A DNA stretch of 57,921 nucleotides, counting the filler, from Sluysia triapertura (lineage: Eukaryota), in the NCBI GenBank assembly GCA_046118255.1. It is 5 parts of 5 records of this genome, joined end to end, with 100 filler letters (N's around TTAATTAATTAA, not from the genome) between each part and the next. Parts side by side here need not be neighbours in the genome. Positions count along the whole stretch, not along the records: positions 36,077 to 46,927 come from JBJNIA010192650.1; 4 more parts are not named here. The stretch is one strand, 5' to 3'. The notes beneath the pieces are model-generated. The model had not been told where the DNA came from and did not search any database. It worked only from the letters and a program-made list of their open reading frames with translations. A program made the translations under genes and the position numbers. Below are positions 43,131 to 46,903 of this stretch, in pieces (position 1 is the first letter of the stretch; the number at the start of each line of letters is the position of its first letter).

Positions 43131-43227
43131 CTGTCTGTGTATATAAACAACTGAGCCAAGCAAACGCCACGTTCCACCTTGTCTATCTACATGGAGCATG
43201 CGCAAAATTTGTAGAAATCGCACACCT
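43131..43227 (-). CDS. KCNQ: KCNQ voltage-gated K+ channel exon (S4 and S4-S5 linker)
   Basis: 97-nt exon, tttag|(A)[32 protein letters not shown]|gtttct; nearly identical to KCNQ1 [32 protein letters not shown]. Confidence 0.95.
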
Positions 43228-43871
43228 CTAAATAACGTAATAATAAGAAAAAATTAAATATTAATGTGGATAATTTTAGTTATAAATAAATGATTTCGAT
43301 GTAGAAAAAATTTAGATTTTTGAAGCCATCCAAACATTAGGCCAAAAGAATTAATATTTTGCTAAGAAATAGCTAGTAATTTATTTGAGCTAAAATCTGG
43401 AAGTAAAACGGTATGTTTCGTTGATTGGCTATGTGTGAAACTCATCTTTTTTATGTTTCAATATTTTCTTTAAGTTTTCATGTAAAAATGGTTATTCCTT
43501 TTTAAGATAAAAACGTACAAAAATATTTTTTAACTAAAGCAATTATTAAAATCATTTTTTTGCTCATAATAATTAATAATTAATTTGAAAATCATTAATT
43601 AGTATCACTTTCTGAATAATCATTTACGAATGGCATTGGGAAAAATAATAATAATATTTTCATATTAATAAAATAATAATAATGCATAAAAATATAAAAT
43701 ATATTTTAGCATACTAAGTTTAAGATTACTTGATATTTTATATTAGAAAGAGTTTATGTATTAAAAAAATTAATTATTATTAAATTTCAATTATTTCAGT
43801 AATTACAATAAAATTATTGTATTTGAAAATCAATACAATAAAAATATCTACCTTGCTAAAATAAATAAATA

Positions 43872-44410
43872 ATGTACGTAGGACTAACTATTCGAAATAT
43901 AGGATTCTACATGAATTCAAAAATAAATATTGAAGAAAATATTAATTGTATAGTTAAAATGCCTGAATATCAATTGAAGGAAATATCAAATATTAGAAAG
44001 ATTTTACTAAGGAAACTAATTGTTCAGTCATTGATCATACAGATTATAATTAATCGTATATTGTATTTAATATTATATATAAAAATCGAAAATTACAATT
44101 ATTATTAATGGATCAATAAGAATAACGTTTCAAGTTAAAGATGACTGCATGCTGTAGCTTATCTTAAAGAATTAGACTGGTATTGAATAAAAACAAAAGT
44201 AGAATTCGAAATTATGATGGTAATCCATGAAAGTCCTGAATATCTCTTGGAAATAATAAAAATTCGGAAACCAATAACAATTTGTGATGTGATAGGTTGT
44301 ATGTCTTGTATGTTTGAAAAATCTCAACCAGTAACCATAAATGTTGAATTACTGAAAGATTATGAAATATCAAAAAAGATAGAGTTATTTCTATTTTATA
44401 AATATACTTA
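43872..44410 (+). mobile_element. L2-clade LINE 3' fragment
   Basis: TIRNIGFYMN..INCIVK..ISNIRK..LIVQSLI and YLKELDW..KVEFEI..SPEYL; similar to 54470-54915. Confidence 0.75.
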
Positions 44411-45939
44411 ATTTAGTATTCATAATTACACTAAACATTACTATATTATTAGTTTTGGAATATAATATACTTTTATTAAGTTAGAAAATATATGTGACCT
44501 AAAATATTATATAAATATTAAGATTTCCGAATAATCCGATTATAGGAGTATAACTATGGAAAATTAGTTGATGAAAATATAAAACTTTTCATTATATCTT
44601 AATTATTTTAAAATATCTTATATTTTTACATTTTGTATCTTCGTTATTATTTTTATTCATTTCTTATTTATCAAGTATAAAATAAAACCATATTAATAAA
44701 TTTGTGAACATTATTTAATCTGCCTTATTAATAAAAATCTAACAATTCTAAAAACATACTAAAACCAATTCTAAACACAATACATAAACATTTAATTCTA
44801 AATAAAAATAAAAACATTAATAAATGTTTTATCTATCATATTAGATTTCAAAAGTTAGGTTTTTATTATAATAAAATAATATTAATGATATTGTCATCTT
44901 CATTATAATATAAATATTACAACTTACACCAGAATTAAGGTTAAAAGTTCTAACAATTCTTAATTCAAGTTACTTTTTAAATTTTAATATAATCATGTTT
45001 AATATTTTTAATTTTAAATTATTAATATTTTAATTAATATAAGTTTTTTATTATTAATTTTTTTAAATTTCATTTTGTAAAATGAGATTGATTTTAAAAA
45101 TAAATTTAAAGTAAAAATAATTAAGAATTTTAAGTGCATAATTTTAAGAATATTATAAAATTATAACAAAATAATTTTTAAAATAAAAATAAAGTAAAAT
45201 AATTTTTTGTCAAAATGTAAACAAAAAATATTGTAATAAATTATTAAAACTAATTATTTCGAAAATAATTTATAATTAATATAAATTGCGTTGTTTCATA
45301 AATTTCCTTAAAATCAGTAAAATGTTTGAATAATAATATTTTGGAAATTTAAATTAATTTTAGCTATAAAAATGGAAAATCTTTATAAAAACAGAATCTT
45401 GAAAGTTATGATTAAGTATTTAATTTTTTATATTATTTAAATAAATACAAAATAAGTATTTTAATTTATTAAATAGATTTATATAATTAAGTTAGATATT
45501 AAAGAAAATTATATAAAAAGATGCTAATACTTATTAGTAACACTTATTATACAAACATTGTTATTGTTTTAATTTAAAATTTTTATATTATTTTAACTAG
45601 TTTTAACAATCAAATAAATCCGATAATTTATTTGCAAGTTTTATATTTTAAATTTTGCTTGATATTATATTTTGTAATTTTAAATTAAGTTAAATTTTAA
45701 TTAATTATTATAATTTTAGATTATTCAATTAAACAAATATAACTGATGAAATTTGTAGTTAATAATATTGCCAAATTTAACAGCTTATTATTTGACATTG
45801 GCTCAATATTTTCCTGTTCTGTTTTTTGTTTGAAAGTTCTACATCTCGCTGTTTAAAGAAATCATCGTAAAATTTAAAATACTAAAGAATGTTTTTTAAA
45901 TTTAATTTTGTTGAAAATAGAATAGTCAGGATGTCACAC

Positions 45940-46681
45940 TTTTTACGTGAAACTTCGGCATCGCATACCACAAAAAACATGAGTAGTGTATTTGGTTCTA
46001 GTGTTACTACACAGTAGAGAGTATCAAATTGGATTGCAAAATTTCGTATAAGTAACTATGATTTCACAAATGAGCCATAAATGTCAATAATAAAACTAAA
46101 AGTCATTGTTGAGTATGGCCTATCTCAGAGTGTTGGAAACAAGCAATATTAAACAGGTAAAGTGAAAATTTTGGATAAGTGAACTGAATGAAATGCAGAA
46201 ACAAAAGCGTTTGGAAGCTTGTTGTTGCTTTCTCGTCACAAATTTGATCCATTTTTGAATCGAATTGTCACTACTAATGTGAAAAGGAACAAATAGGACA
46301 ATCAAAAGCGTTCAGCACAGTGGTTAGAAAAAGACGAATCACTAGAACACACTCCAAAGCGCACTATTCATCAGAAACATTTGATGGTCTAGCGCGATTG
46401 TGATCAATTATGATTTCATGAAAAATGATTCATCAATCGCATCAGAAATATATTGCAACCATCTGGATGAAATGATGCAAAAATCTATAGAAAAACAGCT
46501 TAGATTGGTAAACATATCGATGCATATCTTATTGCATGATAATTCTAAACCACACAGTAACAAGCAATTGTGGCACAACTATAGGAATCTTAACCGACAA
46601 CCGCTTCTTCCGCAATTTGGACAACGTTTAATAGGAAATCAAATTAATTCCGACAATGATACAAAATACCTTAACTCTTAA
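45940..46681 (+). mobile_element. Decayed mariner (DD34D-type) transposase
   Basis: VFG..RVSNWIAKFR..DFTNEP, KRLEAC, PFLNRIVT, DNQKRSAQWL..PKRTIHQKHLMV, YCNHLDEM, ILLHDNSKPH. Confidence 0.9.
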
Positions 46682-46824
46682 ATGTCAGAAGAACAAAAAC
46701 AATTCATTATATTTGTAAGTTGTCAACCAACTTTGACTTTTTCTACAAATTTATCTTGGCGACTAGATAAAATTAAATTTTTAAAATAAATTTATACAAT
46801 AATAATTTTTATATTAATTTTCAG

Positions 46825-46903
46825 ATTTCACAGTTTTATTTGCTTCGTGTGTTGTTTTATCATTTGGTAGTTCTGGACAAGTTTTTGCAACTTCCGCAAT
46901 CAG
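46825..46903 (+). CDS. KCNQ: KCNQ voltage-gated K+ channel exon (S3 to start of S4)
   Basis: 79-nt exon, tttcag|(D)[25 protein letters not shown](R)|gttatt; matches KCNQ1 [27 protein letters not shown]. Confidence 0.93.

What the first reader, a model, noticed from the sequence alone, without database searches (positions are those of the whole stretch)
43131..46903. Consecutive KCNQ exons on opposite strands of the same contig
Seen: the S3 exon (46825-46903, 79 nt, plus strand, ends AG|gt) and the next S4 exon (43227-43131, 97 nt, minus strand, starts ag|A) are both intact with good splice sites. They join in phase (AG+A = Arg, ...ATSAIR-GVRFLQ...), yet point away from each other 3.6 kb apart with no gap between them. 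No other KCNQ exon is visible in between. As I recall, the sizes equal human KCNQ1 exons 4 and 5. Cis-splicing cannot join them as assembled. Inference, in order of prior likelihood: mis-assembly or inversion at the intervening mariner/L2 repeats (the plus exon is 24 nt from the contig end); a real inversion allele; interleaved antisense paralogues; or obligatory trans-splicing as in Drosophila mod(mdg4).
Basis: partly seen in the sequence, partly recalled or inferred. Interest (0 to 1): 0.75.

Follow-up and report, generated by a model that had tools for sequence, protein, structure and literature searches.

The report
Neighbouring KCNQ exons on opposite strands
Two genuine, consecutive exons of a KCNQ potassium-channel gene sit on opposite strands of one short contig; this is most likely a local orientation error or a private rearrangement, not a new way of building the gene, and the read-level test could not be run.

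Summary
A 79-nt exon at 46825-46903 (+) encodes KCNQ helix S3. A 97-nt exon at 43227-43131 (-) encodes S4. Both have AG/GT borders, and the split Arg codon (AG|A) joins them in phase. Their peptides match adjacent residues of solved KCNQ1 structures.

In 46 animal KCNQ loci fetched from metagenomes, S3 always lies upstream of S4 on the same strand, either fused or 98-2482 nt away. It is never on the opposite strand. The piece holds no other KCNQ exon on either strand, no N, and no long inverted repeat.

Geometry leaves one simple model: a minus-strand gene in which a small segment carrying S3 alone is flipped. The left breakpoint lies within 43228-46824 and the right one beyond the contig end. 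Trans-splicing would then need two trans events or two antisense-interleaved half genes, so it is very unlikely.

I could not decide whether the flip is an artefact or a real variant.

My odds: assembly or library artefact about 0.55, real local inversion or inverted exon duplication about 0.38, trans-splicing about 0.03. Interest is low.

The parts
46825..46903 (+). KCNQ exon encoding helix S3 and the S3-S4 linker (79 nt; peptide [27 protein letters not shown], first and last codons split)
   Evidence: Sequence read. Matches KCNQ1 structures at residues 131-153 and relatives' S3. Same AG acceptor and GT donor positions as relatives.
43131..43227 (-). KCNQ exon encoding voltage-sensor helix S4 (97 nt; peptide [32 protein letters not shown] after the split Arg)
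   Evidence: Sequence read. phmmer versus PDB gives E 3.5e-15. Peptide identical to many invertebrate loci. blastn alignments to 45 loci stop at the exon borders.
43228..46824 (.). AT-rich (GC 12-34%) interval between the two exons; it must hold the left breakpoint of any flip; it contains no KCNQ exon
   Evidence: Composition; six-frame read; tblastn with relatives' exons; no long repeats.
45795..46733 (+). Decayed mariner-like DNA transposon remnant (about 0.94 kb, many stops, internal deletions) ending about 90 nt before the S3 exon
   Evidence: Pfam Transposase_1 E 3.8e-5 at 46385-46513 and HTH_48 E 0.017 at 45937-46008. Terminal-repeat-like ends were judged by eye against remembered mariner termini, so the borders are approximate.
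46904..46927 (+). First 24 nt of the intron after the S3 exon, then the edge of the piece
36100..41200 (+). Decayed non-LTR retrotransposon remnant in the stretch downstream of S4 on the gene strand, where S5 is expected but absent
   Evidence: GC 33-42% against 12-26% in the neighbouring AT-rich sequence. RVT_1 E 3.7e-6, below Pfam's cut-off, at 39393-39671. No S5 exon found. Borders are approximate.

Best explanation
The two exons are the real, consecutive S3 and S4 exons of one KCNQ (Kv7) potassium-channel gene of an AT-rich invertebrate. The opposite orientation reflects a local flip of a small segment carrying the S3 exon alone. The left breakpoint lies somewhere in 43228-46824 and the right one beyond the contig end. 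The flip is most likely not part of the functional gene. It is probably an artefact introduced when the contig was built: either a local inversion-type misjoin, or an inverted chimeric molecule of the kind that whole-genome amplification makes. Shown: exon identity, phase, orientation in the contig, and co-orientation in all relatives. Inferred: that the flip is artefactual.
For: Both exons are intact and in phase. This fits both being the working exons of one gene, and a working gene needs them co-oriented. In 46 of 46 informative animal loci S3 is upstream of S4 on the same strand, with 9 fused and 37 separated by introns of 98-2482 nt; there was no opposite-strand hit. The novel residues of the S3 exon lie only in its first 17 positions, and the conserved [10 protein letters not shown] tail is untouched. 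That is the pattern of a selected exon rather than a decaying copy. The join is local, between neighbouring exons. This rules out a random chimera and fits inversion-type errors. More than 85% of chimeras from multiple displacement amplification are inverted sequences with an intervening deletion, mostly within one molecule (PMC1855051). The contig stops 24 nt after the flipped exon. Only one run of 736 million letters holds the stretch, and its contigs hold only 85% of the sampled words. That suggests thin data, so that few reads may decide a contig; this last step is inference.
Against: No direct evidence of an error was obtained. The piece has no N and no long inverted or direct repeats that would explain an assembler flip. 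The only transposon in the interval is old and diverged and seems to have both ends. 85% of the sampled words do occur in a sequencing run, though that run may be the source of the assembly. Whether the library was amplified is unknown.
Confidence: 0.55

Rival explanations
1. A real local structural variant. One form is a small inversion that flips the S3 exon, giving a null allele (possibly heterozygous) or a recently disabled paralogue. The other is an inverted duplication that placed an extra antisense copy of S3 or S4 in an intron, while the working partner exon lies off the contig.
For: The sequence is continuous without gaps or repeat structures that would mislead an assembler. The interval and its flanks carry transposon remnants, which are known to drive such rearrangements (the eri-6/7 precedent). 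An antisense exon copy inside an intron costs nothing. Several distinct KCNQ loci per metagenome sample show that invertebrates often have paralogues.
Against: Both exons are perfectly intact. The S4 peptide is identical to the common invertebrate form, and the S3 substitution pattern looks selected. So the event would have to be very recent. A fixed single-exon inversion would shift the frame of a conserved channel by 79 nt. No second copy of either exon is visible in the piece.
Confidence: 0.38
2. Obligatory trans-splicing between transcripts of opposite strands, as in Drosophila mod(mdg4) or C. elegans eri-6/7.
For: Both splice sites are intact and the phase is compatible. There is precedent for a transposon-driven inversion of a 5' gene part rescued by trans-splicing.
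Against: There are no upstream KCNQ exons on the plus strand in the 10.7 kb before S3. So S3 would be a lone plus-strand exon needing two trans-splicing events, or the two gene halves would have to overlap antisense over more than 7 kb. No flanking repeats were found that could pair the RNAs, although only 24 nt are known downstream of S3. No RNA data exist. All relatives are co-oriented.
Confidence: 0.03
3. Two antisense, interleaved KCNQ paralogues, each exon belonging to a different gene whose partner exons lie off the contig.
For: S3 is more diverged than S4 relative to other animals, which could hint at two genes evolving at different rates.
Against: It requires each gene to sit inside introns of the other, with no further exon of either in 10.85 kb. 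S3 is also more variable than S4 in other lineages such as L056 and L069. It would be a coincidence that exactly consecutive exons face each other.
Confidence: 0.02

Closest known systems
KCNQ1 / Kv7 (KQT) voltage-gated potassium channel genes, exons encoding S3 and S4 (human KCNQ1 exons 4 and 5)
   Same: S4 is 30/32 identical to the KCNQ1 chains of solved structures, and S3 aligns to the adjacent residues. Exon sizes of 79 and 97 nt and the split Arg codon are shared with many animals. From memory, they are also shared with human KCNQ1.
   Different: Here the two exons are on opposite strands. The S3 helix carries five residues not seen in 32 other distinct sequences.
C. elegans eri-6/7 (inverted 5' gene part rescued by trans-splicing)
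   Same: Parts of one gene lie on opposite strands, with transposon remnants nearby.
   Different: In eri-6/7 a complete 5' transcription unit is inverted and flanked by direct repeats that pair the RNAs. Here only one internal exon would be inverted, no such repeats are seen, and no RNA evidence exists.
Drosophila mod(mdg4) inter-strand trans-splicing
   Same: Exons of one product are encoded on both strands.
   Different: In mod(mdg4), by my knowledge, a common 5' unit joins alternative 3' units that have their own promoters. Here an internal constitutive exon of a voltage sensor is concerned, and there is no sign of separate units.
Inverted chimeras of multiple displacement amplification, and inversion-type misassemblies
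   Same: A local join of nearby sequence in inverted orientation with intervening sequence missing (PMC1855051). The feature sits at a contig end.
   Different: It is not known whether the DNA was amplified, and no junction could be located.

Membership tests
KCNQ (Kv7/KQT) channel gene | S4 voltage-sensor signature ([25 protein letters not shown]) | tested here: met
   phmmer versus PDB: only KCNQ1-5 chains matched, best E 3.5e-15, 30/32 identical.
KCNQ (Kv7/KQT) channel gene | S3 helix with the conserved Asp and the [10 protein letters not shown] linker directly before S4 | tested here: met
   KCNQ1 residues 131-153, E 0.005; 76% identity to the fused S3-S4 exon of L046, E 5e-9; alignment to 32 distinct relatives.
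KCNQ (Kv7/KQT) channel gene | Conserved exon borders and phase at the S3|S4 junction | tested here: met
   Same AG acceptor and GT/GC donor positions in relatives. blastn alignments stop at the borders.
KCNQ (Kv7/KQT) channel gene | Remaining exons (S1-S2, S5, pore, S6, C-terminus) in the locus | tested here: not met
   tblastn with relatives' S2-S3, S5 and pore exons finds nothing in 36077-46927. The piece is only 10.85 kb, so this says only that the introns are long.
Inter-strand trans-spliced gene (mod(mdg4), eri-6/7 type) | Opposite-strand arrangement verified in the genome by independent reads | not testable with these tools
No same-species contig was found in the metagenome or protein collections.
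Inter-strand trans-spliced gene (mod(mdg4), eri-6/7 type) | Mature mRNA carrying the exon-exon junction | not testable with these tools
   No RNA run holds the stretch.
Inter-strand trans-spliced gene (mod(mdg4), eri-6/7 type) | Each part is a self-contained transcription unit with its own upstream exons or promoter on its strand | tested here: not met
   No plus-strand KCNQ exon in the 10.7 kb upstream of S3.
Inter-strand trans-spliced gene (mod(mdg4), eri-6/7 type) | Repeats or complementary intron sequences that bring the two pre-mRNAs together | tested here: inconclusive
   Only short AT-rich chance repeats in the piece. Only 24 nt are known downstream of S3.
Assembler inversion between inverted repeats | Inverted repeat pair flanking the flipped segment | tested here: inconclusive
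   No long inverted repeat within the piece. The second repeat would lie beyond the contig end.
Whole-genome-amplification inverted chimera | Amplified library, and a junction absent from unamplified DNA | not testable with these tools
   The library description of run X1 is blank.

The most novel reading that the evidence does not exclude
The contig is correct and fixed in the species. An internal constitutive exon (S3) of a voltage-gated channel gene lies inverted, and the full-length channel mRNA is made by trans-splicing of an antisense-strand exon into the transcript. That would be a two-junction version of the eri-6/7 rescue.
Probability: 0.02. Interest if true: 0.85.

Novelty: not a real feature. 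Interest (0 to 1): 0.15.

Why it matters
If the arrangement were real and the gene still worked, it would be a rare case of inter-strand trans-splicing inside the voltage sensor of a conserved ion channel. As things stand, it is a flag for a probable local orientation error, or a private rearrangement, in a thinly covered draft assembly. Its use is as a warning for anyone annotating KCNQ in this genome. It also provides a clean, conserved exon pair with which assembly orientation can be checked.

Tried and rejected
Those places were kept out of every later search: masked in scripts and skipped in the Rfam ranges.
3. Exact look-up of ten ATG-started ORFs of the piece, to fish independent contigs: none is in the collection.
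4. Metagenome scan with the S4 reading frame: 69 animal loci but no same-species DNA. The best identity was 85.6%, confined to the exon.
5. Word-based protein search with the same 52 aa: 175 short ORFs from many animals, none from this genome.
6. Looking for a breakpoint by composition or AT skew: no consistent signal.
7. Rfam scan for spliced-leader or other RNAs: nothing.
8. Reading the S3 divergence as decay of a pseudo-exon: rejected as inconclusive. The changes avoid the conserved tail, and S3 is also variable in other lineages.
9. A random ligation chimera: rejected, because two consecutive exons of one gene would not meet by chance.
10. A simple inversion of an S4-bearing segment in a plus-strand gene: rejected, because S4 would stay upstream of S3.
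11. The joined S3+S4 peptide was not searched.
12. Locus L029 looks like a vertebrate KCNQ1 (one residue off the solved human chain in S3). It went through the initial batch comparisons of all loci and was left out of the later analyses; I did not follow it up.

Full report
**What is there.** The piece (36077-46927, 10,851 bases, no N) is AT-rich (GC 12-42%).

- On the plus strand, 46825-46903 is a 79-nt exon. It is preceded by a pyrimidine-rich tract ending in cag and followed by gt.
- On the minus strand, 43227-43131 is a 97-nt exon, preceded by ag and followed by gt.
- The first exon ends with AG and the second begins with A, so together they make an Arg codon.
- The 32-aa peptide of the minus exon matches only KCNQ1-5 chains of the Protein Data Bank. 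The best E-value is 3.5e-15, with 30 of 32 residues identical, at residues 155-186 of chain 6uzz_A.
- The plus exon matches residues 131-153 of the same chain (E 0.005).
- The plus exon is also 76% identical to the S3 part of a fused S3-S4 exon in locus L046 (E 5e-9).

The two exons therefore encode directly adjacent parts of the voltage sensor (S3 and S4). They point away from each other, 3597 nt apart, and the plus exon ends 24 nt before the edge of the piece. The claim that the sizes equal human KCNQ1 exons 4 and 5 agrees with my memory of that gene's numbering. It also fits the match to residues 229-260 of chain 7xni_A, if that chain carries native numbering. I did not compare with human sequence.

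**What relatives look like.** A metagenome scan with the reading frame around the S4 exon returned 69 loci from many host animals.

- None comes from this genome. The best DNA identity is 85.6%, and every alignment stops at the exon borders. This independently confirms those borders.
- In the 46 loci counted where an S3 exon could be found, it is always upstream of S4 on the same strand.
- In nine of these loci the two are fused in one exon. In 37 they are separated by an intron of 98-2482 nt (median 1050).
- No opposite-strand hit appeared in any locus.
- The acceptor and donor positions of both exons are the same as here.
- The word-based protein search found 175 short reading frames with this exon from many animals, again none from this genome.

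**What else is in the piece.** tblastn with the relatives' S2-S3 linker, S5 and pore exons finds nothing on either strand.

- There is no minus-strand S3 in the 3.7 kb upstream of S4.
- There is no S5 in the 7 kb downstream of S4.
- There is no plus-strand upstream exon in the 10.7 kb before S3.
- The stretch left of S4 holds a decayed retrotransposon (RVT_1, E 3.7e-6).
- The interval between the exons holds a decayed mariner-like element at about 45795-46733 (Transposase_1 E 3.8e-5, HTH_48 E 0.017). By eye its terminal sequences are present on both sides.
- There are no long direct or inverted repeats and no Rfam family.

**Geometry.**

- If the gene ran on the plus strand, S4 would have to lie to the right of S3. 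Un-flipping any segment that holds S4 leaves it on the left, so that model fails.
- If the whole 5' half of a minus-strand gene were inverted, as in eri-6/7, the exons S1 to S2-S3 would lie between S4 and S3 on the plus strand. They do not.
- The one simple model that fits is a minus-strand gene in which a small segment with S3 alone is flipped. The left breakpoint is within 43228-46824 and the right one is beyond the contig end.
- An equivalent model is an extra inverted copy of one exon.
- Trans-splicing would then need two trans events around a lone antisense-strand exon, or two half genes overlapping antisense for more than 7 kb.
- Interleaved paralogues need each gene to sit in the other's introns.
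- A random chimera cannot explain why exactly consecutive exons meet.

**Is either exon decaying?** The S4 peptide is identical to the commonest invertebrate form. The S3 peptide has five residues unseen in 32 distinct relatives, one of them at a position invariant in that set. All five lie in the first 17 residues, and the conserved tail [10 protein letters not shown] is untouched. S3 is also the more variable of the two in other lineages. Both exons therefore look like working exons, or were so until very recently. That fits an artefact or a recent event, and it does not separate the two.

**Artefact or real.** The direct test failed.

- One run (X1, 736 million letters, library not described) holds 85% of the sampled words, and no RNA run holds the stretch.
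I kept those places out of all later searches.
- Ten reading frames of the piece are not in the protein collection, so no independent contig could be fetched.

For an artefact:

- A working conserved channel gene needs co-oriented exons, as in all relatives.
- The flip sits at a contig end.
- The data seem thin, which is an inference.
- Local inverted joins with missing intervening sequence are the typical product of amplification chimeras (PMC1855051) and of inversion-type misassembly.

For a real variant:

- The sequence is continuous.
- No repeat structure explains an assembler error.
- Transposon-rich introns do suffer such rearrangements. The eri-6/7 locus shows inversions driven by transposons (bioRxiv 10.1101/2024.01.15.575659).

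I put the artefact at about 0.55, a real local inversion or inverted exon duplication at about 0.38, trans-splicing at about 0.03, and interleaved paralogues at about 0.02.

**Comparison with the known.** The exons are ordinary members of the KCNQ/Kv7 family by sequence, order and exon borders. The arrangement resembles eri-6/7 and mod(mdg4) only in having parts on both strands. The features that define those systems were either not met or not testable. Self-contained transcription units were tested and not met. Pairing repeats were inconclusive. A verified genome arrangement and junction reads were not testable.

**Verdict.** The exotic reading is very unlikely. The most probable reading is an orientation error or a private rearrangement. 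Interest is low unless reads from unamplified DNA confirm the contig.

Noticed in passing
window 36100-41200 (+): Decayed non-LTR retrotransposon with many stops, richer in GC (33-42%) than the surrounding AT-rich sequence. RVT_1 match at 39393-39671 is below Pfam's cut-off (E 3.7e-6).
   Followed up: partly
window 44577-45576: Extremely AT-rich kilobase (GC 12-14%) in the middle of the interval.
   Followed up: no
L013, L014, L019, L022-L024, L026, L027, L044 (donor after the S3 exon): A group of metagenome-derived KCNQ loci share a GC (GCAA) donor instead of GT at the S3|S4 intron. Twelve loci also have a GC donor after the S4 exon. This looks like conserved GC-AG introns in one animal lineage.
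   Followed up: no
L043, L050, L056 and protein P0120: AT-rich animal contigs carry an S4 variant (RVLHVDRHGG, with His in place of the usual Gln) and a much diverged S3 fused to S4.
   Followed up: no
L066-L068: A divergent KCNQ-like paralogue ([22 protein letters not shown]) in AT-rich contigs. In L066 the S4 and S5 parts lie in a single reading frame, so there is no intron after S4.
   Followed up: no
L025, L031-L033, L035, L045-L047, L005: In loci with the GIRFLQ...VVFIHRQ form, the S3|S4 intron is absent. From contig names I remember, some may come from termite-gut samples. The intron kept in the window and in vertebrates has therefore been lost in some lineages.
   Followed up: partly
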